Positions 1 through 37,272 of a stretch of DNA of 64,000 nt are shown here, one piece after another. The notes under the pieces were generated by a model. The model was not told the origin of the DNA. It did not search any database and worked only from the letters and a program-made list of their open reading frames with translations. Position 1 is the first letter of the stretch. Each line of letters begins with the position of its first letter. The translations under genes were made by a program, and so were the position numbers. Where the stretch lies: the NCBI GenBank assembly GCA_010909165.1, contig MU008209.1, positions 124,001 to 188,000 of the forward strand, in the 5' to 3' direction. Source of the stretch: Anthoceros angustus (taxonomy: Eukaryota > Plantae > Anthocerotophyta).

Positions 1-1972
1 TAGAGGAGTCAAGTGTATGATTTTGGAAATGAGGCCAATTTCCACGGTCCGAATCGTTCTTGAGATCCGTAAAGTGGATAAAACCGCCTTGTGTGCTTAG
101 TTCGAGAACCAAGACAAGGGTGATGTTGCCATCGAGGCACCCCGCCACTCCGGTGTGACTCTTATTTGTATGGTGGATCGGAGGTTAGGCGGTCTGGAGT
201 CTGTGAGTCGCTCCCGATCAGGAGAAGACCTTCATGAATCCGGAGCAGGCGTGATAGGCGCCAACTCACTGAGGTCGATGATGGGCCGTGGCTTGGGGGC
301 TAGGCGGACGATTCCACTGTATGTCCGGGAAGATGCATGAGGTTATGGTAGGAGAATACGAGACGAGCCATTGTGCCAAGCTTGGGGGGCAAAGTTTTAG
401 GACTTCATAGAGAGCTGCATCCCGGTCTAGTTTCCCATCCCCTTTCTGGATACATGTGGAGATCTCTTTGAGTTGGTTGATGAAGGTTCAGGGCCCTTCA
501 AGCTCGAGATCTTGTAGTATTGTCTCTGCAACGCATACAGGGGTGAAAGCAGAAGGAAGGGTGAGCTCCTTCCTCACCACAGTCTTTGTCCTTGACATTC
601 GCCACCCAATAACAAGAGTGGCCAGGCCTGGCCTCTAGTTCGAGCCGGCCCTAGAAACCATTGTGGAACCCACGGTCTTGCTAGTATCTCGTTTATCCGG
701 ACGGATGGGGACTCCGTTTGAAGGAGCGAGTTGGATCGGGCGCCCTAATGGGAGGTTACCTTGAGGCATTGAGAGGGGCCAATGTTTTGCAAGTATCTTC
801 GTGCTAGGTCATTGAGTAGAGAGCGGACCTTGAGCTCGAGGAGCTCCATGGTGGTGTAGTCAGCCGAGTTCCTTTGCAAGCGTCTCCATAAAGCATTTGA
901 TCATCGAAGGAGGCTTGTGACTTGTTTTCGAAAGCTTCCAACATTGTTCGGGTCGGGTCTGCACGTGAGGGCGATAGGGGAGAAGGTGAACCCTTCTGCT
1001 CGTTCCACTTGTGGCTCTAGTGCCAACTCCCCCAATGCGGGCTCGAGAGGAGTGTGAGGGCGTCGGTAACGGGACACATAGAGTACCCTCTTCTTTTGTT
1101 GAGTGTCGATCCATCTCTCTTTCAAGACGGACAGGAGAGCCTCGGCCATGGGAAGGGGCGAGGTGGTCATTGGTCCAAAGGGGCTCAAGGTCCCAGCCTT
1201 GAGGCCTCAGCTATATACAAGGGGCGTAACCTTGGGCGGGGTCCTCCTTGGGCCTGTGGTTGTGATGCCCACCCTAGGGGAGCGTGTTGCCTTCTTGTTA
1301 TCCTTTCCCATATTGTTCTTATCTCGGGAGAGGAGGCGGGGCGGGATGAGGCGGGATCGGGAGGCTCTTGGTCCCAAGGACTCGAACTTGCCCTCCCTTC
1401 CCGCACATTTCTCGATTGGTTGCAACTCTCAAAGGGTTCTTGTCTCACCGGTCGAGAGTCCAAGGGGTTTCGGCTTGGTTGTGGGACCTTGAGTCTTGAC
1501 CCTTTCTCTTCCTTCAACTTTCATCATCTATGCTTTTTGGGGCGGTTCGTCCTTCCTCCGAGTGTGGAGTCATGTCTCACAGGGGCAGGCGTATCTACCC
1601 TGTTTGAGCACATTTCTCGATTGTTCTAGTGTCTCATATGTTTTAATAGGAGATCCTTGTTATGAGTAGTCACCCTAGATTGTTTGGGCCATCTCATCAG
1701 GAGGGAAGGGACTTCTCCTTCACTCTTATCCATGGTTCCATGTTAAGTAGTTCGGGAGACTTAGTGCGAAGCCTTGGCGCCATGTCCCGAAGAGTGCAAG
1801 CAGGCTTGGAAGAGTGCACTTCTCTCCCGGCGGGTAAACCGCAGCGTGAGTTAGCTCGTCCAAGCGAGACCAGCCAGCCAAGGAGGCGCAGACCAAGTGT
1901 ATATACGCCGGAATTGAGACTCGACACAAAGTTGGATCAAGTCAACCGTTGTTGAGCGCCAGGACATCGGCG
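1..1972 (-). mobile_element. Non-LTR retrotransposon (NeSL/HERO-like RT), 5' portion, cut by the window edge
   Basis: Homologous to 9240-11335. 1-ca.850 is near-identical to 19695-20550. Confidence 0.8.
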
Positions 1973-2083
1973 CTAACCCCGACCCGTCACAACGCGGTCT
2001 AATCCCAACCCTCATGTTGCCTATTGGGTGAACAATCCAATACTTGGTGAATTCTTTCAACACAATGATAGGAAGAGTTGATA
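1973..2083 (-). rRNA. Degenerate 28S rDNA fragment (domain V, H89-H93) abutting the retroelement 5' end
   Basis: The reverse complement matches the conserved LSU sequence CTCTTCCTATCATTGTG..GAATTCACCAAG..TTGGATTGTTCACCCA..AATAGG..GAGCTGGGTTTAGACCGTCGTGAGAC. Confidence 0.9.
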
Positions 2084-2099
2084 AAACTCTTCGCGTATC

Positions 2100-4762: not shown

Positions 4763-4764
4763 AT

Positions 4765-7227: not shown

Positions 7228-7351
7228 ATTATTCATTAAGGATTAAAATTATTAAGTTAAGAATTCAAATTATCCATTAAGAAATACCCGACCTCATCCT
7301 AAATCCGCACCAATCAAGGTATGGCTTGAACCTAGAAACAATGTCTTTCTA

Positions 7352-8056
7352 ACCGTTGTTTTGAAAGCGTTGTTTTGGAGCGTTGTTTTGGAGCGTTGTT
7401 TTGGAGCGTTGTTTTGGAGCGTTGTTTTGGAGCCGTTATTTTGGAGCGTTGTTTTGGAGCGTTGTTTTGGAGCGTTGTTTTGGGCGTTGTTTTGGAGCGT
7501 TGTTTTGAGCGTTGTTTTGGAGCGTTGTTTTGGAGTGCCCAAATGATGAAACCGGCCGTGTTCGGATGCAAAATGTAGTAGTGAAACCGCCGTCGTGTTC
7601 GGATGCAAAAATGTAATAAAGCCCTTTTTTTGCAAAATGTAGTAGTGAAAGCGTTGTTTTTGCAAAATGTAGTGAAAGTTGTTTCGGGTGCAAATAGTAG
7701 TGAAAGCGGAGTTGTTTTCGAGTGCAAAATGTAGTAGTGAAAGGGCTGCTTTGGGGTGCAAAAGGTAATCGAAAGCGGCCGCTATTTTCGGTGCAAAAGG
7801 TAGCGGTGGCGCCATTGTTTTCGAATGTAGTGAAAAATTATTTTCATGTGCAAAATGTAGTAGTGAAAGCAGCTTTGATTTTAAAGAAAAGGTAGTAGTA
7901 AAAGTGGCCGTTGTTTGTGAAAGGTAGTAAAAAGTGGCCGTTGTTTTCGGGTGCAAAAGGTAGTAGTGAAAGCGGCCGTTTGTTTTGGGGTGCAAAATGT
8001 AGTAGTGAAAGCGGTCGTTGTTTTCGGATGCAAAATGTAGTAGTGAAGCGGCCGTG
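7352..8056. repeat. Compound minisatellite: 13-bp (cgttgttttggag)n followed by 38-bp (tgcaaaatgtagtagtgaaagcggccgttgttttcggg)n
   Basis: Directly visible. The periods are echoed by 13-aa and 38-aa repeats in the spurious ORFs. Confidence 0.95.
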
Positions 8057-11000
8057 CGGGGAAGCTGCAGAACGCGCTTGCCTTGTACATAGAGTTCTCC
8101 TTGGAGCTCGGATCCATGCGCCTTCAATCCTCACTATCCGCACTTTGTTATTTCGAATTCCATTCCCACCTAGTCGTAGTAGGCGGACTTCCGAAGGACC
8201 ATTACTTGGATGTCGCTCCAAGTACTGGAAATTTGAGCCCATTATCCACATAGTCCACCCCGTGGATCGCGATATCCATCGAATCGGGCAGCCTGCTCCA
8301 CCCATTTGGAGGGTGTCCGCCGAATGTGAGTAGAGTGGAGGTTCTTTGGGGATACCTCGTGAGATGAGGATTTCATTGGAGTGCTTTGGCCCTTGACGAG
8401 ACGCATCACGCCGCCGGACGGTCTCAAACCACATAGCTTTGAGCGAGGGGTGGAGAGGGTATCCTCGCGATCTATCGCGACCTATCACGCACGAGCGTGA
8501 GGCGGTATCCCTCGCGACGGCGTGAGAGGGCTTATAGTGTTCCCTTGGGGATGCCACGAGATATGAGGATCTCCTCCGAGGTATTTTGGCCTTTGAGGAG
8601 GCGCATCTTGCCTCGACGGTTTCAAGCTATTTGATCTTGAGCGATGAGTGTAGAAGGGTCAAGTGTATGATTTTAGAAATGAGGCCAATTTCAACTCAAT
8701 GCGCTTTTGAGATCCGTAAAGTAGACAAAAACCGCCTTGTGTGCTCGGCGGGTGTGTTTGAGAACCAGGGCAAGGGTGATGTTGCCATCGAGGCACCCTG
8801 CCACTCCGGGTGTGACTCTTATTTGTATGGTGGACCGGAGGTTGAAGAGGTCTATGTCGTTGTGAGTCGCTACCGCGATCAGGCTGGAGAATACCTTCAT
8901 GAATACTAGGAGCAGCGTGATAAGGCACCACCTCTGAGGTCTGATGAGGGCCTGGGGGCTGAGGCTGCGGCCAGATGTCCCCACTATGGGAATATGAGGG
9001 TTATTTGGTAGGAGAATACGACGTAGCCATTGTGTGTCAAGCTTGGGGCAAAGTTTTAGGACTTCATAGGAGAGCTGCCACCCGGTCCTCGTTCCCTCGT
9101 GACTAATGTGAGAGGGCTTATAGTGTTCACTTGGTGGATGCCACGAGATATGAGGATCTCCTCCGAGGTGTTTTGGCCTTTGAGGAGGCATCTTCCTCCT
9201 CGATCGGTTTCAAGCTATCCGATCTTGAGAGATGAGTGTAGAGGAGTCAAGTGTATGATTTTGGAAATGAGGCCAATTTCCACAGTCCCGAATGCGTTCT
9301 TGAGATCTGTAAAGTGGATAAAAACCGCCTTGTATGCTTAGCGGGCGTGTTCGAGAACCAAGACAAGGGTGATGTTGCCATCGAGGCACCCTGCCACTCC
9401 GGGTGTGACTCTTATTTGTATGGTGGATCGGAGGTTGAAGCGGTCTAGATCGTTGTGAGTCGCTCCCGCGATCAGGCTGGAGAAGACCTTCATGAATACC
9501 GGGAGCAGCGTGATAGGGCGCCAACTCTGAGGTCTGATGATGGGCCGCCGTGGCTTGGGGGCTAGGCGGACGATTCCCACTTTGAATGTCGGGAAGATGC
9601 GGCATGAGGTTATTTGGTAGGAGAATACGAGACGTAGCCATTGTGCCAAGCTTGGGGGGCAAAGTTTTAGGACTTCATAAGAGAGCTGCTCGTACCCTGG
9701 TCCTAGTTTCCCATCCCCTTTCGATACATGTGAGATCTCTTTAAGAGTTGGTGTGAAGGCTGGTTCTAAGGGCCCTTCACGGCTCCAGAGATCTTGTAGT
9801 ATTGTCTCGGCTGCAACGCCCTGGGGGGTGAAACCGACGGGGAAGGGGGTGAGCTCCTTCTCGGTCTGGTGCTGTCCTTGACATTGCGCCACCCAATATT
9901 CGGCAAGAGTGGCCATGTCCGCCTCTAGTTCGGGGGCCGTTTCGGCGGCCGGCCTAGAGAGCCATTTGTGGAACCTGCCACGGTCTTGCTAGTATCTCTC
10001 GTTATCTGGACTGTGGACCTGGTTTGAAGGAGCGAGTTCGGATCGCGTCCCTCGGAGGTTACCTTGAGGCATTGAGAGGGGCCAATGTTTGACCTGCAGT
10101 ATCTTCGGAGGTCATTGAGTAGAGAGCGGACCTTGAGCTCGAGGGAGCTCCATGGTGGTGTAGTCAGTTCCTTTGCGTCTCCATAAAGTATTTGATCATC
10201 GAGGAGGCTTGTGACTTGTTTTCGAAAGCTTCGAACATTGTTCGGTCAGATGCGTGAGGGCGATAGGGGAGAAGGTGAACCTTTCTGCTCGTTTCACTAG
10301 TGGCTCTAGTGCCAACTGCCCCAATGCGGGCTCGAGGGGTGAGGCGTCGTGAACACATAGAGTACCTCTTCTTTTGTTGAGTGTGTCGAGTGGTCCATTT
10401 CTCTTTTTGAGACGGGCGGGGAAAGCCTCGGTCATGGGAGGGGGTTGGCGAGGTGGTCATTGGTCCAAAGGGGGCTCAAGGTCCTAGGCCTTGAGGCCTC
10501 GTGGCTATATACAATAGGTGCATGACCTTGGGCGGGGTCCTCCCTGGGGCCTTGCGTGTAGTCGTGGTGCCCCACCCTGGGGAGAGGGGGGAGCGTGTTG
10601 CCTTCTTGTTATCCTTTCCCATATTGCTCTTATCTCGGGAGAGGAGGCGGGGCGGGCGGGATCGGGATCGGGAGGCTCTTGGTCCCAAGGACTCAGAACT
10701 TGCCTCTCCCCTTCCTGTCACATTTCTCGATTGGTTATATGTGCAACTCTCAAAGGGTTCTTGTCTCGGCTGGTCGAGAGTCCAAGGGGTTTCGGGTCTT
10801 GGTTGTGGGACCTTGAGTCTTGACCCCTTTCTCTCTTCCTTCAACTTTCATCATCTATGCTTTTTGGGTTCGTCCTTCCTCCGAGTGTGGAGTCATGTTA
10901 CGTCTTGCATGGGGGCAAGGCATTCTTACTCCTAGCACATTTCTCGATTGTTCTAGTGTCTCGTATGTTTTAATAGGAGATCCTTGTTCTCAGTAGTCAC

Positions 11001-11335
11001 CCTAGATTGTTTGGGCCATCTTACTGTGGGAGGGAAGGGGACTTCTCCCCTTCACTCTTATCCCAACAGTGGTTCCATGTTAAGTAGTTCGGGAGACTTA
11101 GTGCGAAGCCTTGGCGCCATGTCCCGAAGAGTGTGCAAGCAGGCTAGGCTTGGAAGAGTGCACTTCTCTCTCCCGGGCGGGTAAACCCTGCGCAGCGTGA
11201 GTTAGCTCGTCCCCAAGCGAGACCAGCAGCCAAGGGAGGCGCAGTAGACCAAGTGTATATCACTGCCGGGAATTGAGACTCCGACACAAAGTTGGATCAA
11301 GTCAACCGTTGTTGAGCGGCTAGGACATCGCGCCC
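8057..11335 (-). mobile_element. Degenerate non-LTR retrotransposon (NeSL/HERO-like RT), 5' leader to RT motif 7, with an internal RT duplication, 3'-truncated
   Basis: RT motifs GPGYEQLSYEVLK, WRPITLLPVFMKVFS, TPGVAGCLDG, FTDLKNAFGTV, ISRGIxQxNTISPL, VDYVDN and GMEFEITKC. Confidence 0.88.
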
Positions 11336-11446
11336 CTAACCTGACCTGTCTCACAACGGTCTAATCCCAGCTCATGTTGCCTATTGGTGGGTGAACAATC
11401 CAATACTTGGTGAATTCTTTCAACACAATGATAGGAAGAGTTGATA
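11336..11446 (-). rRNA. Degenerate 28S rDNA fragment (H89-H93) at the element 5' junction; best-preserved copy
   Basis: The reverse complement reads ..GGATTGTTCACCCACCAATAGGCAACATGAGCTGGGATTAGACCGTTGTGAGACAGGT, then element sequence. Confidence 0.92.
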
Positions 11447-11464
11447 AAACTCTTCGTATCATTG

Positions 11465-12303
11465 GACTCTCATTGTTAATCATTCCGAGAGAATAAAATT
11501 CGTTGCACACAGTTTCTAACGTCATAACGTTTGTGGATTGGAATATGTCAACAGGCTATACTCTCATTCCTATACTCTCACTAGTAGTCATTCCGAGAGA
11601 ATAAAATTAATTACGCTTCTAACGCCATAACGTTAGTGGTTGCATATCTCAACAAGCTGCAGCAAACGTGGCTCCATCAATGTGATGTAGTGTGACTTTG
11701 TCAAGGCCAAATAAGAATGTGAAGTGCAAGCCCTTGTTTGATTCAAGAGTCGAGAGCGGAAGAAGGACTAGAAGGCCGTTGTACAATGCCATCCACTATG
11801 CCAAGCAAGTCACGTGTTGAGCATGGGAACGCGTCACTCCATATCTCAAACTTTGTGCTCAAAATAGTCTTTTCTTTGAATTGAGAAGTAAAATTCATAT
11901 AATTAATAATTGGTGTAGGTGGCATCGTCATAGGAGAGGACGTCGATGCCATTGTTCTGATGATCAAGCTATAATATGATAATATAAAAGAAGTAAGTTA
12001 TGACTGTAGCCGAGAGGGCGTCTAATATAGTTATATAAAAAAGCTTGATAAGCAAAATTATTATGAAAACAAAGATTAAAGTCAAATAGCCCAGTGAACT
12101 ATGCGACGATCACTTGGGGCAAAGACTGTAGCAAGGTGCTAAACTGCGTGAGCAGCTGATTGCACCAACTCGGAGAGCTGATGAAGATGATTCCAAAGAT
12201 GATGACACTCCAATTGGAATGTTCAACTCTTGAGCAGTAGCACTTGCTTGCTCATAAAGATAGCGCTGAGTGGCGATGTTGTCAAATAGTCATTCCAATG
12301 GAT
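11465..12303 (-). mobile_element. Ty1/Copia gag remnant
   Basis: Copy of 2100-2919 (ORF 11743..11967, TRDLLGIVDGIVQRP). Confidence 0.65.
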
Positions 12304-12584
12304 GGATCAAAAAGGACGTTGCTATAAACACTTGGCCACAAGCCGCGATTATCCCACTAATTTTGATACCTCTAGCTTCAAATTCAAACTAAAGGATCAA
12401 TAGGCCATGCTTTCGTAGTTTGTATTCATACTGAAAATGAAAATCAAATGAGCTTTTACCCTTGTGTTCCACACGAGATTTTTATTCTCGTTGAGCTCAA
12501 AAGGATTTCTATCTTAGGACACCTTGTTGGTCCGATTTGGCTGGGGTGACACATGTGTTCGGCACATATGTTAAAAGATAACGC
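12304..12584 (-). rRNA. Degenerate 28S rDNA fragment plus inverted P-loop piece
   Basis: Copy of 2920-3200; TTTGGCTGGGGTGACACAT on the plus strand at 12536. Confidence 0.88.
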
Positions 12585-13177
12585 GCAAGAAGCACGCCTT
12601 AAGATCGGAAGCGGGGGTAAAGCCCCGCCTCCACCTCATGGAATAAATAAAATAACGTTAAAAGTAGTGGTAAGGGGGCAAAGCCCCGCACCACCTCATG
12701 AAATAAATAAAATAACGTTACAAATAGTGGTATTTCACTTGCGCCTACGGCTCCCACTTATTCTACACCTCTTAAAGTCATTTCGCAATGATTGCATGCC
12801 GCCATGCCTTCGTTTTATATTACCCTGTGAGCTCAAGGGTTTTCAGAGACGGCGCCTGTTGGGAATACCCTGCAAGAGGACGACCTAGTTTGCACACTCG
12901 CATAAGAACGTCCAATCGTTGGACCGGAAACCGCGGTGAAACCACGGGAGAAACTAGAGAGGCAACTTCGAATACGTTAACAGGAAACTACGAAGAGGCA
13001 TGGAGAGAGACCAAATCAGAAACGTGCCACAGGAACTTCGTGGAATAACAGGACGGATAGAAGGACACGACGGAGGAGAGCTTACAAATTGCAGCCTAGC
13101 AAGTGTAGGAAGGAGGAGGTTGAATTGGAGTGCATCATTCATCGCTGCAGATCGAGTCGCCGATCGGAGCGGACAAC

Positions 13178-15632: not shown

Positions 15633-15633
15633 A

Positions 15634-18215: not shown

Positions 18216-18526
18216 AACCGTTGTTTTGGAGCGTTGTTTTGAAAGCGTTGTTTTGGAGCGTTGTTTTGGAGTGCCAAATGTAGTAGTGAAAGCGACCGTC
18301 GTGGTTGGATGCAAAATGTAGTAGTGAAAGCGGCCGCAGTTTTGGGGTGCAAGATGTAGTAGTGAAAGCGGCCGCTATTTTCGGGTGCAAAATGTAGTAG
18401 TGAAAGCGGCCGCTGTTTTGGGGTGCAAAATGTAGTAGTGAAAGCGGCCGTTGTTTTGGGGTGCAAAATGTAGTAGTGAAAGCGGTCGTTGTTTTCGGAT
18501 GCAAAATGTAGTAGTGAAGCGGCCGT
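18216..18526. repeat. 13-bp/38-bp compound minisatellite, shorter allele
   Basis: Same units as 7352-8056. Confidence 0.95.
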
Positions 18527-21492
18527 GCGGGGAAGCTGAAGGACGCACTTGCCTTGTACATAGAGTTCTCCTTAGAGCTCGGATCCATGCGCCTTCAATC
18601 CCCACCATCCGCACTTTGTTATTTCGAATTCCATTCCCACCTAGTCGTAGTAGGCGGACTCGAAGGACCATTACTTGGATGTCGCTCCATCGGAAATTGA
18701 GCCTCATTATCCATAGTCCACCCGTGGATCGCGATGTAGATGCATCCCGAACTGCGTGGCGGTCATGTTCCACCCATTTGGAGAGGTGTCCGCCGACGGC
18801 CGAATGTGAGAAAATGGCGTTCCTTGGGGATACCTCGGGAGATGAGGATTTCATTGGAGGTGCTTTGGCCCTTGACGAGGCGCATCACGCCCGGACGGTC
18901 TCAAACCACATAGCTTTGAGCGAGGGTGGAGAGGGTATCCCTCGCGATCTATCGCGACCTATCACTGCACGAGGGCGTGAGAGCAGATCCTATCTCTGCG
19001 ACGGCGAGAGGCTTATAGTGTTCCTTGGGGATGCCACGAGATATGAGGATCTCCTCAGGTATTTTGGCCTTTGAGGAGGCGTATCTTCCTCCTCGAGCAG
19101 TTTCAAGCTATCGATCTTGGTGTAGGAAGGGTGTCAAGTGTATGATTTTAGAAATGAGGCCAATTTCCACAGTCTCAATGCGTTTTTGAGATCCGTAAAG
19201 TAGATAAAACCGCCTTGTGTGCTGGTGTGTTTGAGAACCGGGGCAAGGGTGATGTTGCCATCGAGCCCCTGCCACCCTGTGTGACTCTTATTTGTATGGT
19301 GGACCGAGGTTGAAGAGGTCATGTTGTGTCGCCACGCGATCAGTGGAGAATACCTTCATGAATACTAGGAGCGTGATAAGGCACCACCTCGAGGTCGATG
19401 GAGGGAGCGCTCGGGCCAGGCGGATCTAATCCACTTTGTATGTCGGAAGATCATGAGGTTATTTGTAGGAGAACAACACGTAGCCATTGTGCCAAGCTTG
19501 GGGGCAAGTTTTGGGACTTCATGGGAGCCGCCAGACGGGTCCTCGTTCCCTATGTGCCGAATGTGAGAGGGCTTATAGTGTTCCTTGGTGGATGCCACGA
19601 GATATGAGGATCTCCTCCGAGGTGTTTTGGCCTTTGAGGAGGCGCATCTTTCCTCCTCGATCGGTTTCAAGCTATCGATCTTGAGAGATGAGTGTAGAGG
19701 AGTCAAGTGTATGATTTTGGAAATGAGGCCAATTTCCACGGTCCGAATCGTTCTTGAGATCCGTAAAGTGGATAAAACCGCCTTGTGTGCTTAGTTCGAG
19801 AACCAAGACAAGGGTGATGTTGCCATCGAGGCACCCCGCCACTCCGGTGTGACTCTTATTTGTATGGTGGATCGGAGGTTAGGCGGTCTGGAGTCTGTGA
19901 GTCGCTCCCGATCAGGAGAAGACCTTCATGAATCCGGAGCAGGCGTGATAGGCGCCAACTCACTGAGGTCGATGATGGGCCGTGGCTTGGGGGCTAGGCG
20001 GACGATTCCACTGTATGTCCGGGAAGATGCATGAGGTTATGGTAGGAGAATACGAGACGAGCCATTGTGCCAAGCTTGGGGGCAAAGTTTTAGGACTTCA
20101 TAGAGAGCTGCATCCCGGTCTAGTTTCCCATCCCCTTTCTGGATACATGTGGAGATCTCTTTGAGTTGGTTGATGAAGGTTCAGGGCCCTTCAAGCTCGA
20201 GATCTTGTAGTATTGTCTCTGCAACGCATACAGGGGTGAAAGCAGAAGGAAGGGTGAGCTCCTTCCTCACCACAGTCTTTGTCCTTGACATTCGCCACCC
20301 AATAACAAGAGTGGCCAGGCCTGGCCTCTAGTTCGAGCCGGCCCTAGAAACCATTGTGGAACCCACGGTCTTGCTAGTATCTCGTTTATCCGGACGGATG
20401 GGGACTCCGTTTGAAGGAGCGAGTTGGATCGGGCGCCCTAATGGGAGGTTACCTTGAGGCATTGAGAGGGGCCAATGTTTTGCAAGTATCTTCGCTAGGT
20501 CATTGAGTAGAGAGCGGACCTTGAGCTCGAGGAGCTCCATGGTGGTGTAGTCACCGAGTTCCTTTGCAAGCGTCTCCATAAAGCATTTGATCATCGAAGG
20601 CTTGTGACTTGTTTTCAAAAGCTTCCAACATTGTTCGGAGTGCGCGCACGTGAGGCGATAGGGAGAAGGTGAACCTTCCGCCGTTCCACTTGTGGCTCTA
20701 GTGCCAACTCCCCCAATGCGGGCTCGAGAGGAGTGTGAGGGCGTCGGTAACGGGACACATAGAGTACCCTCTTCTTTTGTTGAGTGTGTCGAGCGATCCA
20801 TCTCTCTTTTCAAGACGGACAGGGAGAGCCTCGGCCATGGGAAGGGGCTGGCGAGGTGGTCATTGGTCCAAAGGGGGCTCAAGGTCCTAGGCCTTGAGGC
20901 CTCGTAGCTATATACAATAGGGGCGTAACCTTGGGCGGGGTCCTCCTTGGGGCCTTGCGTGGTTGTGATGCCCCACCCTAGGGGAGCGTGTTGCCTTCTT
21001 GCCATCCTTCCCTTATTGCTCTTATCTGGGGTCCCAGGACTCAGACTTGCTTCTCCCCTTCACCTCACATTCTCGATTATGTGTGCAACTCTAAAAGGGC
21101 TCTTGTCTTGGCCGGTGAGTCGGGTCGGGTGGGAGCTTGAGTCTTGACCCTTTCTCCCCTTCCTTCAACTTTCATCATCTATGCTTTTTGGGCGGTTCGT
21201 CCTTCCTCCGAGTGTGGAGTCATGTCTCACAGGGGCAGGCGTATCTACCCTGTTTGAGCACATTTCTCGATTGTTCTAGTGTCTCATATGTTTTAATAGG
21301 AGATCCTTGTTATGAGTAGTCACCCTAGATTGTTTGGGCCATCTTACTGTGGGAGGGAAGGGGACTTCTCCCCTTCACTCTTATCCCAACGGTGGTTCCA
21401 TGTTAAGTAGTTCGGAGAGTGCGAAGCCTTGGCGCCATGTCCCGAAGAGTGTGCAAGCAGGCTAGGCTTGGAAGAGTGCACTTCTCTCCCCG
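18527..21492 (-). mobile_element. Non-LTR retrotransposon copy; ca. 200 bp of the 5' leader deleted
   Basis: Collinear with 8057-11180. Confidence 0.85.
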
Positions 21493-21513
21493 GGTGGGTG
21501 AACAATCCAATTC

Positions 21514-23948
21514 GATTGTTCACCCACCAATAGAAACGTGTTTGGGTTTAGGCCGTCGTGAGGCAGTCGGGTTAGGCCTTGATGCCCTAGCCGCCCAAAG
21601 ACACTTGAACCATTCCAACTACGAGTCGGAGTTGATTCCGGCAATGATATACACTTGGTCTACTCCGCTCCCTTGGCCGGTGGTCTCGTTTCGGGACGAG
21701 CTAACTCACGCAGGGTTTACCCGATCGAGGGAGAGAGGTGTACTCTCCCAAGCCTAGCACGCTAACACACTTTCTATTACGCCGCCAGGCTCCGCACTAA
21801 GTCTCCCGAACCTTTCAACTCGGAACCAAAGCTAGAACAGAGGGAAAGGGGAGAAGTCCCCTTCCCTCTCACACTAAGATACCCTAAATAGTCTAGGGTA
21901 CCTGTTCGGAACCTGGTTCTCCCATCTGATACACACCAGACCCTTGGATACATCGAGAAATGTGCTAAGAATTGGAGGGCAAGAATGCAGCTTGCGCCCC
22001 CAAGACCCCAGCGCCGGACTACGCCGGGAGTCCACACCTAGTTGGAAGAAGAACCTCCCCACGAGACACGAATCGAGAAATGTGCTAAACCAGGGGGGCA
22101 AGAATGCAGCTTGCACCCCCAAAGACCTCAAAGCTGATCCACGCCGGGAATCCACACCTAGTCGGAAGATGAACCTCCCATGAGAGGCATGAATCGAGAA
22201 ATGTGCTAAGAGAGAGGGGCAAGAATGCAGCTTGCACCCCCAAGACCCCGAAGGTGGACTACGCCGGGAGTCCACACCTAGTTGGAAGATGAACCTCCCC
22301 ACGAGACATGAATCGAGAAATGTACTAAAACAGGGAGGCAAGAATGCAGCTTGCACCCCCAAGACCCCAAAGCTGGACTACGCCGAGCGTCCACACCTAG
22401 TCGGAAGATGAACCTCCCCACGAGGCATGAATCGAGAAATGTGCCGAATGGGAGGGAGGGGCCCAGACTTAAGGTCTCCCAGCCAAGACCAGCACCCCCC
22501 CCTGCCCCCCCTTGGATCCCCACACCTGGCTAGGACAAGAGAGACCCTTGGAGAGATGCACAAAAGCCAACCGAGAAATGTGCCAGGAGGGGGAGAGAGA
22601 CAAGTCCCGAGGTCTCACGACCAAGACCCCTCCCTCCCCGTCGCCCCCTCCCTCCCCTCCCACAAGAGAAGAGCACCAAGGAAAAGGGAGACAAGATGGT
22701 TGCTCACCCCCCGCCCCCCCCCCATGCTGGGGCACCACGTCCACACACAGGACTTAAGGGAGGACCCCGCCCATGGTCACACCCTATTGTATATGGCCAG
22801 GAGGTCGTAGGGCCTGAACCCGCAGGCCCCTTTGGAACGCCAAGATACCCGTTCCCACAGCGAGTGCCCTTCACCACTCAAAAAAAGCTTGCTATGCTCC
22901 TATCACGTCTACTAGATGTTTGTCAGAAAGGCCCCCCCCCCGGGAGGGTGCCGCCTAAGACCCTAACGCATTGATCAAACCAAGGAACTCCCAGCCAACC
23001 GGGAGGAGGAGAGGAAGTGATTCACCCACTCCACACAAACTCCCGGAGGGTGCGCTAGGCTATCAATACTAGCGCAGCGACTCCCTCTTGGCCTCCCATT
23101 CAAACGTGGAGACCCGCAAGCGGAAGACCGTAACCGCGACCAAGGAAAACGTGAGAATGAGGCCATCCGATGACCGTCTCTCCTTGACTCCGGCGTTCGG
23201 TCCACCGACTCGCTCCTAAGTGCCGTAACAGCGCCCCCTCCCCTTTCTCCCAAGGTAGAGGAGAGGCCTTCTGTGGTACATCCGCCTCGTGTCCCTAGGA
23301 CCCACCCTTGGGAGACATCCATCGACGCTGATCGGCAGGAATCGGGATAGGTGGAACCCATGCAACTCCTCATGACGACCATGGACCAAGCCCGAACCCT
23401 TTGAAAGGCACCCGAGGTCACGGTAGGGGCCGTGCCAGCCAATAGGGATGGGATGCTAACTCACATAGACGGTTGAACAGGGCCACCTTGACTCCCATCG
23501 AACGAGGAAATGCCTTCGCAAGGGAGAGGCCTGCGCCTTAAGTGAGTGCGCCACGAAAGTGAACCCAGCGCATCCGTTCCCTATCCCGCCCAAAAGAGTA
23601 GCCCGGTCCAAGTGGCCTTCACCGGTGTCAAAACCCAAAGGTATCTCCGCGAGGGAGTTTCTGGGCAAGCCGTCCCCCCGGGTCGACGCATGGGACACCC
23701 CCGAAGGTGGCACTAGGCACCCCCTAGAAGCCTATTTCACTCAGTGGGGCAAGCATCCCAGGGACAACCTACCCCACAAAAAGTCGCCGGGGTCGTGGAG
23801 GACGGAGCTAAACCCCGGGGTGTCGGGGCAAGCACAGGCCCGCCGGGTCCTAGGCGGCACCGTTCGCATTCCACTCGCTAGTTTGGCCGGACGAGTCAAT
23901 GATGGGATCTTGGCGATCGGGAAGCTGCCACTTGTGACGGACGATTAA
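21514..23948 (+). mobile_element. Diverged second subfamily of the element, RT-less, starting with ca. 55 nt of 28S-like sequence
   Basis: Starts GATTGTTCACCCACCAATAG..GGGTTTAGGCCGTCGTGAGGCAG, followed by a leader homologous to the reverse complement of 11000-11335. No RT motifs are recognisable. Confidence 0.8.
21950..22445 (+). repeat. About 120-bp tandem repeat (4+ units) inside the element (also ca. 35205-35655)
   Basis: atcgagaaatgt recurs at about 21952, 22072, 22193, 22312 and 22431. Confidence 0.92.
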
Positions 23949-24480
23949 GTCCAAGGGGTTTCGGGTCTTGGTTGTGGGACCTTGAGTCTTGACCCTTTCT
24001 CTTCCTTCAACTTTCATCATCTATGCTTTTGGGGCGGTTCGTCCTCCGAGTGTGGAGTCATGTTCTGGTCTTGCATGGGGGGCAAGCTGCATTCTTACTC
24101 CCTGTCTGAGCACATTTCTCGATTGTTCTAGTGTCTCGTATGTTTTAATAGGAGATCCTTGTTCTCGAGTCACCTAGATTGTTTGGGCCATCTTCATGGG
24201 AGGAAGGGACTTCTCCCTTCACTCTTATCCTATGATGGTTCCATGTTAAGTAGTTCGGGAGACTTAGTGCGAAGCCTTGGCGCCATGTCCCAAGAGTGTG
24301 CAGGCTAGGCTTGGAAGAGTGCACTTCTCTCTCCCGGGGTAAACCTGCGCGTGAGTTAGCTCGTCCTCAAGCGAGACCCGGCCGGCCAAGGAGGCGCGAG
24401 ACCAAGTGTATATCACCGCCGGAATTGAGACTCGCACAAAGTTGGATCAAGTCAACCGTTGTTGAGCGGCTAGGACATCG
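23949..24480 (-). mobile_element. Second copy of the element 5' region within unit 2
   Basis: Matches 10779-11335. Joined through AGTCCAAGG microhomology. Confidence 0.85.
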
Positions 24481-24585
24481 CTAACGACCTCTAGCGGTCT
24501 AATCCCAAACTCATGTTGCCTATTGGTGGGTGAACAATCCAATACTTGGTGAATTCTTTCAACACAATGATAGGAAGAGTTGATA
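24481..24585 (-). rRNA. Degenerate 28S rDNA fragment (H89-H93)
   Basis: Copy of 11336-11446. Confidence 0.88.
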
Positions 24586-24603
24586 AAACTCTTCGTATCA
24601 TTG

Positions 24604-28740: not shown

Positions 28741-28741
28741 T

Positions 28742-31349: not shown

Positions 31350-31640
31350 TTTGGGCGTTGTTTTGGGCGTTGTTTTGGAGCGTTGTTTTGGAGTGCCAAA
31401 TGTAGTAGTGAAAGCGACCGTCGTGGTTGGATGCAAAATGTAGTAGTGAAAGCGGCCGCAGTTTTGGGGTGCAAGATGTAGTAGTGAAAGCGGCCGCTAT
31501 TTTCGGGTGCAAAATGTAGTAGTGAAAGCGGCCGCTGTTTTGGGGTGCAAAATGTAGTAGTGGCCGTTGTTTTGGGGTGCAAAATGTAGTAGTGAAAGCG
31601 TCGTTGTTTTCGGATGCAAAATGTAGTAGTGAAAGCGGCC
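31350..31640. repeat. 13-bp/38-bp compound minisatellite
   Basis: Same units as 7352-8056. Confidence 0.95.
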
Positions 31641-34600
31641 ATGCAGAAGGCGAAGGGCGCACCTTGTACATAGAGTTCTCCTTAGAGCTCGGATCCATGC
31701 GCCTTCAATCCCCACCATCCGCACTTTGTTATTTCGAATTCCATTCCCACCTAGTCGTAGTAGGCGGACTCCCGAAGGACCATTACTTGGATGTCGCTCC
31801 AAGTACTGGAAATTTGAGCCTCATTATCCACATAGTCCACCCCGTGGATCGCGATGTCGTGCATCCTGAATCCGTGGCAGTCATGTTCCACCCATTTGGA
31901 GAGGGTGTCCCGCGCGACGGCGAATGTGAGTAGAGTAATGGCGTTCCTTTGGGGGATACCTCGGGAGATGAGGATTTCATTGGAGGTGCTTTGGCCCTTG
32001 ACGAGACGCATCACGCCGCCCCGGACGGTCTCAAACCACATAGCTTTGAGCGAGGGGTGGAGAGGGTATCCCTCGCGATCTATCGCGACCTATCACGCAA
32101 GCGGCGTGAGGCGGTATCCTCGACGGCGAATGTGAGAGGGCTTATAGTGTTCCCTTGGGGGATGCCACGAGATATGAGGATCTCCTCTGAGGTATTTTGG
32201 CCTTTGAGGAGGCGTATCTTGCCTCCTCGAACGGTTTCAAGCTATCTGATCTTGAGCGATGAGTGTAGAAGGGTCAAGTGTATGATTTTAGAAATGAGGC
32301 CAATTTCCACAGTCTCGAATGCGTTTTTGAGATCTGTAAAGTAGACAAAAACCGCCTTGTGTGCTCGGCGGGTGTGTTTGAGAACCAGGGCAAGGGTGAT
32401 GTTGCCATCGAGGCACCCTGCCACTCCGGGTGTGACTCTTATTTGTATGGTGGACCGGAGGTTGAAGAGGTCTATGTCGTTGTGAGTCGCTACATCAAAT
32501 GAATACCTTCATGAATACTAGGAGCAGCGTGATAAGGCACCACCTCTGAGGTCTGATGAGGGAGCGCCGTGGCCTGGGGCTAGGCGGACGAATCCCACTT
32601 TGTATGTCGGGAAGATGCGACATGAGGTTATTTGGTAGGAGAATACGAGACGTAGCCATTGTGCCAAGCTTGGGGGCAAAGTTTTAGGACTTCATGGAGG
32701 CTGCTTTCGTGCCGGTCCTCGTTCCCTCGTGACGGGGAATGTGAGAGGGCTTATAGTGTTCACTTGGTGGATGCCACGAGATATGAGGATCTCCTCGAGG
32801 TGTTTTGGCCTTTGAGGAGGCGTATCTTCCTCCTCGATCGGTTTCAAGCTATCGATCTTGAGAGATGAGTGTAGAGGAGTCAAGTGTATGATTTTGGAAA
32901 TGAGGCCAATTTCCACGATCCGAATCGTTCTTGAGATCATAAAGTGGATAAAAACCGCCTTGTGTGCTCGGGTGTGTTTGAGAACCAAGACAAGGGTGAT
33001 GTTGCCATCGAGGCACCCGCCACTCCGTGTGACTCTTATTTGTATGGTGGATCGGAGGTTGAGGCGGTCTGGAGTCGTTGTGAGTCGCTCCATGGTGGGA
33101 AGACCTTCATGAATCTGGCGGCGTGATAGGCGCCAACTCGAGGTCGATGATGGGGTAGTGGCTTGGGGGCTAGGCGGACGATTCCCACTATGTCGGGAAG
33201 ATGCGGCATGAGGTTATTTGGTAGGAGAATACGAGACGTAGCCATTGTGCCAAGCTTGGGGGGCAAAGTTTTAGGACTTCATAAGAGAGCTGCTCGTACC
33301 CCGGTCCTAGTTTCCCATCCCCCTTTCTGGATACATGTGGAGATCTCTTTAAGAGTTGGTGTGAAGGCCGGTTCTAAGGGCCCTTCACGGCTCCAGAGAT
33401 CTTGTAGTATTGTCTCGGCTGCAACGCCCTGGGGGGTGAAACCGACGGGGAAGGGGGTGAGCTCCTTCTCGATGCAGTCTTGACCTTGACATTCGCCACC
33501 CAATATTCGCAAGAGTGGCCATGTCGCCTCTAGTTCGGGTTTGTTGACGGCCCTAGAAACCATTGTGGAACACCGCGGTCTTGCTAGTATCTCGTTTATA
33601 CGGATCGGGGACTCGTTTGAAGGAGCGAGTTCGGATCTCGTCCTAGGAGGTTACCTTGAGGCATTGAGAGGGCCAATGTTTGGTATTGCGAGTATCTTCG
33701 TGCTAGGTCATTGAGTAGAGGCGGACCTTGAGCTCGAGGAGCTCCATGGTGGTGTAGTCGGCCGAGTTCCTTTGCAAGCGTCTCCATAAAGCATTTGATC
33801 ATCGAAGGAGGCTTGTGACTTGTTTTCAGCTTCCAACATTGTTGGTCGTGCGCGTGAGGCGATAGGAGAAGGTGAACCCTTACACTTTCGTTCCAGTGGC
33901 TCTAGTGCCAACTCCCCAATGCGGGCTCGAGAGGGTGTGAGGCGTCGGTAGCAGGACACATGAGTACCCTCTTCTTTTGTTGAGTGTGTCGAGCGATCCA
34001 TCTCTCTTTTCAAGACGGACAGGGAGAGCCTCGGCCATGGGAAGGGGCTGGCGAGGTGGTCATTGGTCCAAAGGGGGCTCAAGGTCCTAGGCCTTGAGGC
34101 CTCGTAGCTATATACAATAGGGGCGTAACCTTGGGCGGGGTCCTCCTTGGGGCCTTGCGTGTGGTTGTGATGCCCCACCCTAGGGGGGGGGGAGCGTGTT
34201 GCCTTCTTGCCATCCTTCCCTTATTGCTCTTATCTCGGGGGGGTCCCAAGGACTCAGAACTTGCTTCTCCCCCTTCCTGTCACATTTCTCGATTGGTTAT
34301 GTGTGCAACTCTAAAAGGGCTCTTGTCTTGGCTGGTCGGGAGTCCAGGGGGTTTCGGGTCTTGGTTGTGGGAGCTTGAGTCTTGACCCCTTTCTCCCTTC
34401 CTTCAACTTTCATCATCTATGCTTTTTGGGGCGGTTCGTCCTTCCTCCGAGTGTGGAGTCATGTTCTGGTCTTGCCTGGGGGGCAAGCTGCATCCTTACC
34501 CCCTGTTTGAGCACATTTCTCGATTGTTCTAGTGTCTCATATGTTTTAATAGGAGATCCTTGTTATGAGTAGTCACCCTAGATTGTTTGGGCCATCTTAC

Positions 34601-34755
34601 TGTGGGAGGGAAGGGGACTTCTCCCCTTCACTCTTATCCCAACGGTGGTTCCATGTTAAGTAGTTCGGGAGACTGAGTGCGAAGCCTTGGCGCCATGTCC
34701 CGAAGAGTGTGCAAGCAGGCTAGGCTTGGAAGAGTGCACTTCTCTCCCCCGGGCG
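31641..34755 (-). mobile_element. Non-LTR retrotransposon copy (RT with internal duplication)
   Basis: ORF 31751..32041 ILISRGIPQ..IHGVDYVDN; ORF 32242..32424 FTDLKNAFETV. Confidence 0.88.
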
Positions 34756-34776
34756 GGTGGGTGAACAATCCAATTC

Positions 34777-37272
34777 GATTGTTCACCCACCAATAGAGCA
34801 TTTGGGTTTAGGCCGTCGTGAGGCAGTCGGGTTAGGCGCCTGCCTAGCCGCACCGATTGAACCATTCCAACTCTGAGTCGGGAGTTCCGATTCCCGGCAA
34901 TGATATACACTTGGTCTACTCCGCTCCCTTGGCCGGTGGTCTCGTTTCGGGACGAGCTAACTCACGCTGCGCAGGGTTTACCCGATCGAGGGAGAGAGGT
35001 GTACTCTCCCAAGCCTAGCCTGCTAACACACTTTTCGGGACACAGCGCCAAGGCTCCGCACTAAGTCTCCCGAACCTTTCAACTCGGAACCAAAGCTAGA
35101 ACAGAGGGAAAGGGGAGAAGTCCCCTTCCCTCTCACACTAAGATACCCTAAATAGTCTAAATTGCACGAACTGGTTCTCCATCGATACACACGGACCCTT
35201 GGATACATCGAAATGTGCTAAGAATTGGAGGCAAGAATGCGACACCCCAAGACCCGAAGGTGGACTACGGAGTCCACACCTAGTTGGAAGAAGAACCTCC
35301 CACGAGACACAGATCGAGAAATGTGCTAAACCGGGGCAAGAATCGACACCCCAAAGACCTCAAAAGGCGATCCTTGGGAATCCACACCTAGTCGGAAGAT
35401 GAACCTCCCATGAGAGGCATGGATCGAGAAATGTGCTAAGAGAGGGGCAAGAATCGACACCCCAAAGACCTCAAGGTGGACTACGGCAGGAGTCCACACC
35501 TAGTTGGAAGATGAACCTCCCACGAGACATGAGCAGAAATGCAAAGCAGGGAGGCAAGAATCGGCTTGCACCCCAAGACCCCAAAAGGCCGGACTCGCAG
35601 GCGTCCACACCTAGTCGGAAGATGAACCTCCCACGAGGCATGAATCGAAATGTGCCGAATGGGAGGAGGGCCAGACTTAAGGTCTCACGACCAAGACCAG
35701 CACCCCCCTTGGATCCCCACACAGCTAGGACAAGAGACCCTTGGAGATGCACAAAAGCCAGCAGAAATGTGCGGGAGGAGAGACAAGTCCCGAGGTCTCA
35801 CGACCAAGACCCCTCCCTCCCCGTCGCCCCCTCCTCCCCTCCCAGGTCGAGAGCACCAAGGAAAGGGAGACAAGATGGTTGCTCACCCCGCCCCCATCTT
35901 TGGGGCACCACGTCCACACAGGACTTAAGGGAGGACCCGCCCATGGTCACACCTATTGTATATGGCCGGAGGTCGTGGGGCTGAACCGCGAGCCTTTGGA
36001 GCCAAGATACCCGTTCCCAGTGATTGCACCACTCAAAAAGCTTGCTATGCTCCTATCCGTCTACTAGATGTTTGTCGGAAAGGCCCCCCAGGGAGGCTGC
36101 CTAAGACCCTAACGCATTGATCAAACCAAGGAACTCCCGATAGGGAGGAGGAGAGTGATTCACCACTCCACACAAACTCCGAAGTGCGCTGCTATCAATA
36201 CTAGCGGGGACTCCCTCTTGGCCTCCCATTCAAGCGTGGAGACCCATGGCGGAAGGCGTGCGACCAAGGAAAACGTGAGAATGAGGCCATCCGATGACCG
36301 TCTCTCCTTGACTCGGCGTTCGGTCCACTCGCTCCTAAGTGCTTGTGAGGCCCCGCCTCCCCTTTCTCCCAAGGTAGAGGAGAGGGAGAAATCTTGGTAC
36401 ATCCGCCTCGTGTCCCTAGGACCCACCCTTGGGAGACATCCATCGATGTCGACAGCTGGGGCGGGATAGGTGGAACCCATGCAACTCCTCATGACGACCA
36501 TGGACCAAGCCCGAACCCTTTGAAAGGCACCCGAGGTCACAGCCGGGGGCCGTGCCAAAGCCAATAGTGCGGGGATCAGATACTAACTCACATAGACGGT
36601 TGAACAGGGCCACCTTGACTCCCATCGAACGAGGAAATGCCTTCGCAAGGGAGAGGCCTGCGCCTTAAGTGAGTGCGCCACGAAAGTGAACCCAGCGCAT
36701 CCGTTCCCTATCCCGCCCAAAGGTAGCCGGTCCAAGTGGCCTTCACGGTGTCAAAACCCAAAGGTATCTCCGAGGAGTTTACAGGCAAGCCGTCCCGGGT
36801 CGGCATGGGACACCCAGAAGGTGGCACTAGGCACCCCTAGAAGCCTATTTCACTTTCGATGGGGCAAGCATCCGAGGACAACCTACCCACAAAAAGTCGC
36901 GGTCGCGGAGGACGGAGCTAAACCGGGGTGTCGGGGCAAGCAGCCCAGGTCCCTAAGCGGCTGCCGTTCGCATTCCACTCTTGCTAGTTTGGCGCGGACG
37001 AGTCAATGATGGGATCTTGGCGATCGGAAGCTGCCACTTGTGACGGACGATTAAGTCCAAGGTCTTGACTAAATAGAGCCCATGTCCGCCTTAGCACAAG
37101 TCGGGTCAGCAATTGGCCGTCTCGAGTGCGGCCTTGCACTCCTCGTGAGGCTTCTTCCCTCCGGCGGCGATGGGGAGGGACGCTAACTAGCGGGACCTGG
37201 ATAGAGCGGTGTTGCAGCGGGTTAAACATGCCGAAAGGCATCCACCATAGCATAACGCCAGGATTGATACAG
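34777..37272 (+). mobile_element. RT-less second-subfamily element including a putative structured 3' end
   Basis: Copy of 21514-23948 plus ca. 210 extra hairpin-rich bp (37060-37272). Confidence 0.75.

What the first reader, a model, noticed from the sequence alone, without database searches (positions are those of the whole stretch)
8057..12584. Candidate 28S-rDNA site-specific non-LTR retrotransposon in a land plant, targeting the peptidyl-transferase centre
Seen: the 5' end of a NeSL/HERO-like RT element (PGVAGCLD, DLKNAFGTV) joins 28S sequence at ...AGACCGTYGTGAGACAGGT|. About 400 nt of upstream 28S (P-loop to H93) is retained in pieces. A clearly diverged second subfamily (21514, 34777) starts with 28S-like sequence ending at the same site. 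Two subfamilies sharing one junction is what target specificity predicts. Known: the site lies just 3' of the A2602 equivalent, hundreds of nt downstream of the R2 site (TTAAGG|TAGC). rDNA-specific R elements are described mainly from animals; the insect APE-type RT elements insert in this general region, and I know of no land-plant example. Inference: this is a plant rDNA-targeting, probably RLE-type family, seen here as degenerate orphons outside the rDNA array. The endonuclease domain and a downstream 28S flank are not visible.
Basis: partly seen in the sequence, partly recalled or inferred. Interest (0 to 1): 0.85.

Follow-up and report, generated by a model that had tools for sequence, protein, structure and literature searches.

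The report
Dead plant LINE at ribosome-gene site
A bryophyte-grade land plant (a hornwort, per an earlier scan note) carries dead, duplicated copies of a jumping gene joined to a fragment of the large ribosomal RNA gene, and its closest relatives, in sea anemones and corals, always insert at that same spot, so the plant lineage very probably targets or once targeted it.

Summary
On the minus strand, a decayed non-LTR reverse-transcriptase element (8057-11342) abuts a decayed 28S fragment. Rfam places that fragment at LSU model 2402-2984, in two pieces split by an ~850-bp insert.

Every copy in the window belongs to a ~13.1-kb tandem plus inverted segmental duplication and shares the same 3' truncation and flank. 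The "second subfamily" differs from the first as much in its 28S flank as in the element. The window therefore gives no independent insertions.

- The element's closest relatives (tblastn E 3e-35) are a family in sea anemones, a coral and unidentified sequencing-run and metagenome contigs.
- Those relatives carry a C-terminal CCHC plus restriction-like endonuclease domain.
- Six loci of that family show the same 3' junction (|TGTTCACCC). Three show the 5' junction (TTTAGACC|). Together these imply a ~40-bp target duplication.
- The plant 5' junction lies about 12 nt further along the 28S gene.

These are dead orphon copies outside the rDNA. The endonuclease half and the downstream 28S flank are absent here. 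The scan had already met this lineage elsewhere in this genome (s1-285894, s1-285866). I found no description of it in the literature I could search.

The parts
12296..12815 (-). Decayed 28S rRNA gene fragment, first piece (Rfam LSU model about 2402-2881)
   Evidence: RF02543, 177-190 bits, E 1e-45 or better
11447..12295 (-). Unrelated ~850-bp insert that splits the 28S fragment; it contains a 92-bp internal duplication (11466-11557 and 11574-11658); unclassified
   Evidence: the 74-aa ORF inside it has no Pfam hit
11343..11446 (-). Decayed 28S fragment, second piece (model 2882-2984), ending at the element's 5' junction
   Evidence: 80-86 bits; 48 of 52 bases match the conserved 28S from TGTTCACCC to GAGACAG
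9989..11342 (-). 5' region of the element (untranslated leader and decayed N-terminal coding part); no recognisable domain
   Evidence: no Pfam hit and no match to the anthozoan N-terminal profile. The 5' end is shared by copies A and B
8057..9988 (-). Decayed reverse-transcriptase region with an internal ~600-bp tandem duplication (8508-9096 and 9093-9711), truncated after the YVDD region
   Evidence: tblastn with the anthozoan family: E 3e-35, 33% identity over 295 aa at 9958-9098; duplication
7841..8055 (.). 38-bp tandem repeat array abutting the truncated 3' end of the element; the same flank is present at every copy
1..2093 (-). Copy A1 (cut by the window start) with its 28S piece; junction near 1981
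   Evidence: 88% identity to 9239-11460
18310..21503 (-). Copy 3: same element with the same 3' truncation and flank. Its first ~156 nt and most of the 28S piece are deleted, leaving about 17 nt of 28S (GGATTGTTCACCCACC) at its head
21510..22836 (+). Copy B1: inverted copy with about 58 nt of 28S-like leader and about the first 0.9 kb of the element, 68-80% identical to A. It forms a palindrome with copy 3 centred near 21510; junction near 21568
23948..24599 (-). Copy A3: 5' part of the element plus its 28S piece; junction near 24486
31432..34758 (-). Copy 4: retains the most RT sequence (through VDYVDNEA, the YVDD equivalent, to about residue 485 of the 1043-aa relative)
34773..35159 (+). Copy B2: second inverted copy, junction near 34828. 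The DNA match runs to 35159, and weaker similarity continues to about 35967

Best explanation
These are dead, 3'-truncated orphon copies of a plant lineage of non-LTR retrotransposons of the restriction-like-endonuclease (RLE) type. The lineage is specific, or was once specific, for one site in the 28S rRNA gene, spanning the A-loop (H92) to H93 at the peptidyl-transferase centre.

Inferred mechanism, by analogy with the intact sister family and with R2:
- The element's endonuclease nicks the antisense strand of 28S at GGAT|TGTTCACCC.
- The freed 3' end primes reverse transcription of the element RNA.
- The sense strand is opened 40-55 nt downstream, which leaves a target-site duplication.

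Inferred history here: one such insertion, together with about 600 nt of upstream 28S, ended up outside the rDNA. It lost its 3' half and was then copied by an inverted duplication and by ~13-kb tandem duplications.

Shown: the RT kinship, the 28S/5' junction, the duplication history, and the site specificity of the sister family. Inferred: the plant element's endonuclease, its 3' junction and target duplication, and whether any live copy exists.
For: 1. 28S ends at 11343 and the element starts there.
2. The exhaustive protein search found only two hits below 1e-10. In the tblastn comparison with the window the clearly closest long hit was a sea-anemone protein, P0006 (E 6e-28 against 1e-15 or worse for the rest). 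Its family gives tblastn E 3e-35 against the window. Shared motifs are shown.
3. That family has a CCHC motif and an RLE-like PD...E...K block at the C-terminus. PDB R2 proteins are its only solved relatives (E 7e-20).
4. Six loci from Actinostola, two sequencing-run assemblies, one ENA assembly and two metagenome contigs share the 3' junction |TGTTCACCCACC. Three loci show the 5' junction TTTAGACC(G)|. Both ends could be read in L001, L003 and L004, giving a ~40-bp duplication.
5. The plant junction lies about 12 nt from the anthozoan 5' junction, in the same orientation. My rough estimate is that a random hit inside the ~585-nt 28S fragment would do this about 3% of the time.
6. The quick ML tree places the window RT as sister to P0002 plus the anthozoan clade (SH-aLRT 92), inside a starred (97) clade that holds the two rows whose C-termini match the family's endonuclease profile and the R2-annotated rows.
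7. Duplication history.
8. An earlier scan note (s1-285866, not tested here) reports another copy in this genome whose 3' end is followed by 61 nt of 28S starting at the anthozoan insertion point.
Against: - The window holds no endonuclease domain, no 3' end and no downstream 28S flank.
- All copies here trace to one event, so specificity within the plant is not shown by this window.
- RT identity to the sister family is only about 30-33%, over a decayed sequence on a long branch (1.62). The sister grouping has SH-aLRT 92 from a quick search and is not starred.
- No named reference sequences for NeSL, HERO, R4, R9 or CRE were available.
- No closer plant protein exists in the protein libraries, and no sequencing run could be listed. 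Live copies or copies inside rDNA are therefore unproven.
- The plant 5' junction is not identical to the anthozoan one.
Confidence: 0.72

Rival explanations
1. Chance insertion. A non-specific RLE-type LINE happened to land in a stray 28S fragment that was already outside the rDNA, and the block was then duplicated. The agreement with the anthozoan site is coincidence.
For: Only one ancestral insertion can be inferred from the window. The junction is about 12 nt off the anthozoan one. Earlier notes list several other RLE-type LINEs in this genome with other targets.
Against: The nearest relatives are strictly site-specific at the same place and in the same orientation. My rough estimate is that a random hit within 15 nt of that junction in a ~585-nt fragment, in the right orientation, has about a 3% chance. 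5' junctions of RLE elements are known to vary by a few to tens of nucleotides (established knowledge for R2).
Confidence: 0.12
2. Two diverged subfamilies (A, and B at 21514 and 34777) inserted independently at the same 28S site, which would directly show target specificity in this plant.
For: The B copies are only 72-80% identical to the A copies yet share the junction. Their 28S leader keeps some true 28S bases that A has lost, such as GGGTTTAG.
Against: A-B divergence in the 28S flank (84-90% substitution identity) equals that in the element (82-85%). This is expected if one insertion was duplicated and both arms then decayed. B1 and copy 3 form a palindrome with a near-perfect 15-17 nt inverted repeat at its centre. 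B carries only about 0.9 kb of the element. Every minus-strand copy whose 3' end lies in the window shares the same 3' truncation and flank. The 28S comparison covers only about 52 nt, so its power is low.
Confidence: 0.1
3. The element is an APE-type rDNA element akin to the insect RT or R1-clade elements that insert in this part of 28S.
For: Many weak hits to the RT piece are APE-type proteins of about 900 aa.
Against: Those hits are far weaker (E 1e-15 or worse, against 6e-28 to 3e-35 for the RLE family). No APE similarity lies upstream of the RT. The tree separates the window from every row that Pfam showed to carry an AP endonuclease.
Confidence: 0.03

Closest known systems
Unnamed anthozoan 28S-specific RLE family found here (Actinostola sp. 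QZH41_002839 = P0006/L001; Oculina patagonica LOC144628818 = P0155; run and metagenome contigs L002-L004, L006-L008)
   Same: It is the closest RT found (33% identity over 295 aa, E 3e-35). It shares the motifs WKIG..FLPKP, SWRPITL.P, AQKGG, HHRR and SYVDDEA. It lies in the same orientation in 28S, with a 5' junction within about 12 nt of the plant one.
   Different: The anthozoan copies are intact (1037-1088 aa, with CCHC plus RLE) and have both junctions and a ~40-bp duplication. The plant copies are dead, lack the C-terminal half, lie outside rDNA, and join 28S at GAGACAG rather than TTTAGACC. I found no published name for this family.
R2 (28S-specific RLE non-LTR retrotransposon of animals)
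   Same: Single-ORF RLE-type LINE, sequence-specific for 28S rDNA, sense orientation, presumably using target-primed reverse transcription. R2 proteins are the only solved structures that match the sister family (E 7e-20).
   Different: R2 inserts at E. coli positions 1928/1929 (PMC2048585), roughly 620-680 nt upstream of this site. R2 has N-terminal zinc-finger and Myb domains, whereas the sister family shows none. R2 makes little or no target duplication.
R9 of bdelloid rotifers (Gladyshev and Arkhipova 2009, cited in PMC13580325; details from my own knowledge)
   Same: An rDNA-specific RLE-type element that generates a long target-site duplication in 28S.
   Different: R9's duplication is about 126 bp and at another site. 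It was not compared by sequence here.
Utopia / NeSL-related target-specific families (PMC4640811)
   Same: RLE-type lineages with strict targets in multicopy RNA genes. Utopia is the precedent for one target specificity spanning eukaryotic kingdoms.
   Different: Utopia targets U2 snRNA genes. The planarian LIN families that target 28S do so at other sites (S6 Fig). Membership could not be tested for lack of reference sequences.
Insect RT elements (Anopheles RT1/RT2, R1 clade; from my own knowledge, not verified)
   Same: Reported to insert in the 3' third of 28S, possibly near this region.
   Different: They are APE-type. The window element groups with RLE-type elements.

Membership tests
Non-LTR (LINE) reverse transcriptase | RT motifs 0 to C/D in LINE order | tested here: met
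   Motifs run from APGY..L.Y through SWRPIT, AQKGG-equivalent, D..NAFG and SRGIPQGN to VDYVDNEA. Pfam RVT_1 does not fire on the broken pieces.
RLE-type (R2-superclade) site-specific LINE | C-terminal CCHC motif and PD-(D/E)xK restriction-like endonuclease | tested here: not met
   Absent from every copy in the window, because all are cut inside the RT. Present in the sister family. The absence is due to truncation, not to a different architecture.
RLE-type (R2-superclade) site-specific LINE | RT groups with RLE-type rather than APE-type elements | tested here: met
   Quick ML tree: the window lies inside a 21-row clade with support 97* that holds the R2-annotated rows (P0156-P0158) and the two rows whose C-termini match the family's endonuclease profile (P0099, P0047). 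Every row that Pfam showed to carry an AP endonuclease is on the other side.
RLE-type (R2-superclade) site-specific LINE | Independent copies in the host share the same target junctions | tested here: not met
All copies in the window are segmental duplicates of one event.
Anthozoan 28S A-loop/H93 RLE family | 3' junction at |TGTTCACCCACC of 28S | not testable with these tools
   The 3' end of the element is missing from the window. The rest of the genome could not be searched.
Anthozoan 28S A-loop/H93 RLE family | 5' junction at TTTAGACC(G)| with a ~40-bp target duplication | tested here: inconclusive
   The plant junction lies about 12 nt further on (GAGACAG|), in the same orientation. A duplication cannot be seen without the 3' end.
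Anthozoan 28S A-loop/H93 RLE family | Closest RT relatives | tested here: met
   tblastn E 3e-35 for the family against 1e-15 or worse for all other hits. Sister position has SH-aLRT 92.
R2 proper | Insertion at the R2 site (TTAAGG|TAGC, E. coli 1928/1929) | tested here: not met
   The junction is at Rfam model position about 2984, in H93. The R2 site position is taken from PMC2048585.
R2 proper | N-terminal zinc-finger and Myb DNA-binding domains | tested here: not met
   No Pfam hit and no CCHH pattern in the N-termini of the sister family. Nothing is recognisable in the window's 5' region.
APE-type rDNA elements (R1 clade, RT) | N-terminal AP endonuclease | tested here: not met
   No APE similarity upstream of the RT. 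The tree separates them.

The most novel reading that the evidence does not exclude
Hornworts carry, or recently carried, a live rDNA parasite of a kind so far described only in animals. It would be an RLE-type LINE lineage that enters the 28S gene at the A-loop/H93 core of the peptidyl-transferase centre with a 40-55-bp target duplication. It would share that target with a cnidarian sister family, either by descent from very early eukaryotes or by transfer between kingdoms. It lacks the zinc-finger and Myb domains that R2 uses to find its site, which would imply a different way of reading the target.
Probability: 0.35. Interest if true: 0.8.

Novelty: new variant of a known kind. Interest (0 to 1): 0.62.

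Why it matters
Site-specific RLE retrotransposons of rDNA (R2 and its kin) are a model for target-primed reverse transcription and are being developed as safe-harbour insertion tools. The literature I could search describes them from animals only (PMC4640811, PMC13580325).

A plant lineage with a cnidarian sister family at one and the same 28S site would matter in three ways:
- It adds a new, universally conserved target in the ribosome's catalytic core.
- It is a second case, after Utopia, of one target specificity spanning kingdoms.
- It is a family that finds its site without the R2-type N-terminal DNA-binding domains.

The intact anthozoan proteins make this testable in vitro. The plant copies in this window are fossils and show only that the lineage was once present.

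Tried and rejected
- Pfam on ten stop-free pieces of the element: no hit.
- A profile of the anthozoan N-terminus against six-frame translations of all 5' regions: nothing significant.
- A search for AP-endonuclease similarity upstream of the RT: none.
- Rfam at a permissive threshold over 10900-13700: only LSU matches, so no known ribozyme family at the element's 5' end.
- The P0002 clade (a third lineage, 37-39% identical to the anthozoan family and 30% to the window): all members come from one unidentified ENA assembly, ERZ25878582, whose DNA could not be served. Its host and flanks stay unknown.
- P0001, the top hit by E-value, is a brine-shrimp gene model with six RT stretches and is irrelevant.
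- Sequencing runs: none was listed for 9341-11342.
- Metagenome scan with a 30-nt pattern conserved between the A and B copies: no match. The protein-pattern scan found only three more loci of the anthozoan family.
- Literature searches for a plant rDNA-specific RLE LINE, or for this anthozoan family, found none. The planarian 28S-targeting LIN families use other sites. The insect RT site could not be checked.
It was rerun using references only.
Full report
**What is in the window**

The window is plant nuclear DNA, not an rDNA array. It holds PPR and PPR-DYW genes, a BAHD-type transferase and a crooked-neck splicing-factor ORF. The closest named relatives of that ORF are mosses and liverworts at 80-84% identity. 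An earlier scan note calls the genome a hornwort; I did not verify the species.

Rfam finds five fragments of eukaryotic LSU rRNA, all on the minus strand and all from the same part of the gene, model positions about 2400-2995.

In the region of the finding, the 28S fragment runs as follows:
- Model 2402 to about 2881 at 12815-12296.
- An unrelated ~850-bp insert at 11447-12295.
- Model 2882-2984 at 11446-11343.

At 11342 the similarity to 28S stops and a degenerate non-LTR element begins, running down to about 8057.

**Anatomy of the element**

About 1.35 kb of unrecognisable 5' sequence (9989-11342) precedes the RT. The RT starts at a methionine (MATLAEYW) that aligns with the corresponding methionine of its relatives.

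The RT region carries an internal ~600-bp tandem duplication (8508-9096 and 9093-9711), along with stops and frameshifts. The best-preserved copy (31432-34758) keeps the RT up to the YVDD-equivalent box (VDYVDNEA), about residue 485 of a 1043-aa relative.

Every minus-strand copy whose 3' end lies in the window then breaks off into the same 38-bp tandem repeat and the same downstream segment. The thumb, CCHC and endonuclease parts are absent from the whole window, and so is 28S sequence downstream of the site.

**The copies are not independent**

Self-comparison shows a ~13.1-kb higher-order tandem duplication: 10779-23956 against 23948-37062, at 92% identity. Older duplications lie inside it.

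Three copies keep the 28S/element junction on the minus strand, near 1981, 11343 and 24486. They are about 88% identical over the junction region, indels included.

Two copies (18310-21503 and 31432-34758) have lost the first ~156 nt of the element and most of the 28S piece. Each is followed immediately by an inverted partial copy on the plus strand: B1 at 21510-22836 and B2 from 34773.

The boundary between copy 3 and B1 is a near-perfect short palindrome made of the 28S bases GGATTGTTCACCCACC. B carries only about 0.9 kb of the element.

A and B differ by 10-16% in substitutions over the ~52 nt of shared 28S flank, and by 15-18% over the first 420 nt of the element. Each flank's distance to the conserved 28S sequence (8-11%) roughly adds up to the A-B distance. 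This is what one insertion, duplicated early and then decaying neutrally, would give. It does not require two subfamilies.

The comparison has low power because the flank is short.

**What the element is related to**

An exhaustive HMMER search with the best RT piece (216 aa) found only two proteins below 1e-10 and none that is close.

In the tblastn comparison with the window, the clearly closest long hit is P0006 (E 6e-28, against 1e-15 or worse for all others). P0006 is a hypothetical protein of the sea anemone Actinostola.

Its family includes a coral protein (Oculina) and several full-length ORFs of 1037-1088 aa from sequencing-run and ENA contigs. Against the window the family gives E 3e-35, with 33% identity over 295 aa.

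Features of the family proteins:
- Pfam recognises only RVT_1, plus a weak zf-RVT match.
- There is no N-terminal zinc finger or Myb domain.
- The conserved C-terminus has a CxxC...HxxxC motif followed by a PD...E...K..KY block, which is a restriction-like endonuclease.
- R2 proteins are the only solved structures that match (E 7e-20).

A quick ML tree of 71 RT rows places the window sequence as sister to P0002 plus the anthozoan clade (SH-aLRT 92). This group sits inside a starred (97) clade that also holds the R2-annotated rows (P0156-P0158) and the two rows whose C-termini match the family's endonuclease profile (P0099, P0047). Every row that Pfam showed to carry an AP-endonuclease domain is on the other side.

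The window row has a long branch (1.62), so its exact position is provisional.

**The sister family is strictly site-specific at this very place**

In the Actinostola contig, the element is flanked upstream by 28S ending ...GGGTTTAGACCG. Downstream, 28S restarts at TGTTCACCCACC and runs on to the 3' end of the gene. That is a ~41-bp target-site duplication.

The other loci agree:
- Locus L004 shows the same with TTTAGACC| and |TGTTCACCC.
- L003 shows both ends.
- L002, L006 and L008 show the 3' junction.

In total, six loci share the 3' junction and three show the 5' junction. By my own alignment to E. coli 23S numbering (from memory, not verified), the 3' junction falls in the A-loop at about 2551/2552 and the 5' junction at about 2590.

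The plant junction, about 12 nt further on at GAGACAG (just past A2602), is in the same orientation. It is blurred by a GGTTAG microhomology with the next 28S bases. Variation of this size at 5' junctions is ordinary for R2-type elements (established knowledge).

My rough estimate is that a random insertion into the ~585-nt 28S fragment would fall this close, and in the right orientation, about 3% of the time.

**Reading**

The lineage is RLE-type, and its nearest relatives target this exact 28S region. The plant copies are therefore best read as fossils of a 28S-site-specific element.

These fossils left the rDNA together with about 600 nt of upstream 28S. They lost their 3' half and were amplified by inverted and tandem segmental duplication.

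The mechanism is inferred from the intact relatives and from R2, not shown for the plant: an antisense-strand nick at GGAT|TGTTC, target-primed reverse transcription, and sense-strand opening 40-55 nt downstream.

The palindrome axis in copy 3/B1 lies about 9 nt upstream of the anthozoan nick site. That could mean a fold-back repair of an endonuclease break, but this is speculation.

**What is missing**

- Nothing in the window shows a plant endonuclease, a 3' junction, a target duplication or a second independent insertion.
- No closer plant protein exists in the libraries.
- No sequencing run could be listed, so no reads were laid.
- Metagenome scans gave only more copies of the anthozoan family.
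- A third lineage (P0002 and kin) sits between plant and anthozoan in the tree, but it comes from one unidentified assembly without accessible DNA.

**Earlier notes of this scan**

Notes s1-285894 and s1-285866 describe a broken RLE element elsewhere in this genome. Its only relatives were a sea anemone and a coral, and its 3' end is followed by 61 nt of 28S starting at their insertion point.

I reached the anthozoan family independently from the RT of this window and verified its site specificity. I could not read the other locus. If the two are the same family, this window supplies the missing 5' junction and that locus the 3' junction.

**Literature**

The papers I could search describe rDNA-specific RLE elements from animals only and list no plant case (PMC4640811, PMC5035012, PMC13580325). 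The planarian 28S-targeting LIN families use other sites. I found no name for the anthozoan family. Repbase itself could not be consulted.

**Verdict**

The kind of element is known (site-specific RLE LINE). The target site and the plant host appear new. The copies here are dead.

Noticed in passing
window 21490-21530 and 34753-34796: There is a short near-perfect palindrome (GGGTGGGTGAACAATCCAAT / TCGATTGTTCACCCACC) at the joint between the minus-strand copy and the inverted B copy. Its axis lies about 9 nt upstream of the point where the anthozoan relatives are inserted. It may be a fold-back repair of a break at the target site.
   Followed up: partly
window 11447-12295: An ~850-bp insert splits the 28S fragment at model position 2881/2882. 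It has an internal 92-bp duplication and a 74-aa ORF with no Pfam hit. It is also present in the other units (about 2100-2950, about 24600-25450, 37269-38100). It is unclassified and may be a fragment of an LTR element.
   Followed up: partly
window 7354-7535 and 7841-8055: A 13-bp array (14 copies) and a 38-bp array (about 6 copies) lie directly at the truncated 3' end of every element copy.
   Followed up: partly
window 4256-7406, 15125-18271, 28233-31393: A 3.1-kb segment is repeated three times at 96-97% identity and contains broken PPR-repeat ORFs. PPR pseudogene fragments are therefore part of the same higher-order repeat.
   Followed up: partly
window 45603-47780 (-): There is an uninterrupted 726-aa crooked-neck (CLF1/CRN) ORF, 84% identical to the Sphagnum protein. 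An intron-free copy of this gene could be a retrogene or simply an intron-poor genome.
   Followed up: no
window 38827-40605 (+): A BAHD-type transferase (Pfam Transferase, E 3e-42) starts right at the edge of the repeat array. The upstream ORF 38827-39513 begins inside sequence shared with the repeated units.
   Followed up: no
L001-L004, L006, L008 (anthozoan and metagenome loci): The intact family members share a conserved 3' end (GATATCAT ... CCCCAT in several) just before the 28S junction, and a ~40-bp target duplication. L008's downstream 28S is itself decayed, so orphon copies exist in animals too.
   Followed up: partly
L001 9739-13841: In the Actinostola contig, the 3' end of 28S (to model 3399) is followed only 2.1 kb later by the 5' part of another 28S (model 24-1888). 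No 18S match was listed between them in the Rfam scan. This is an unusual or rearranged rDNA arrangement.
   Followed up: no
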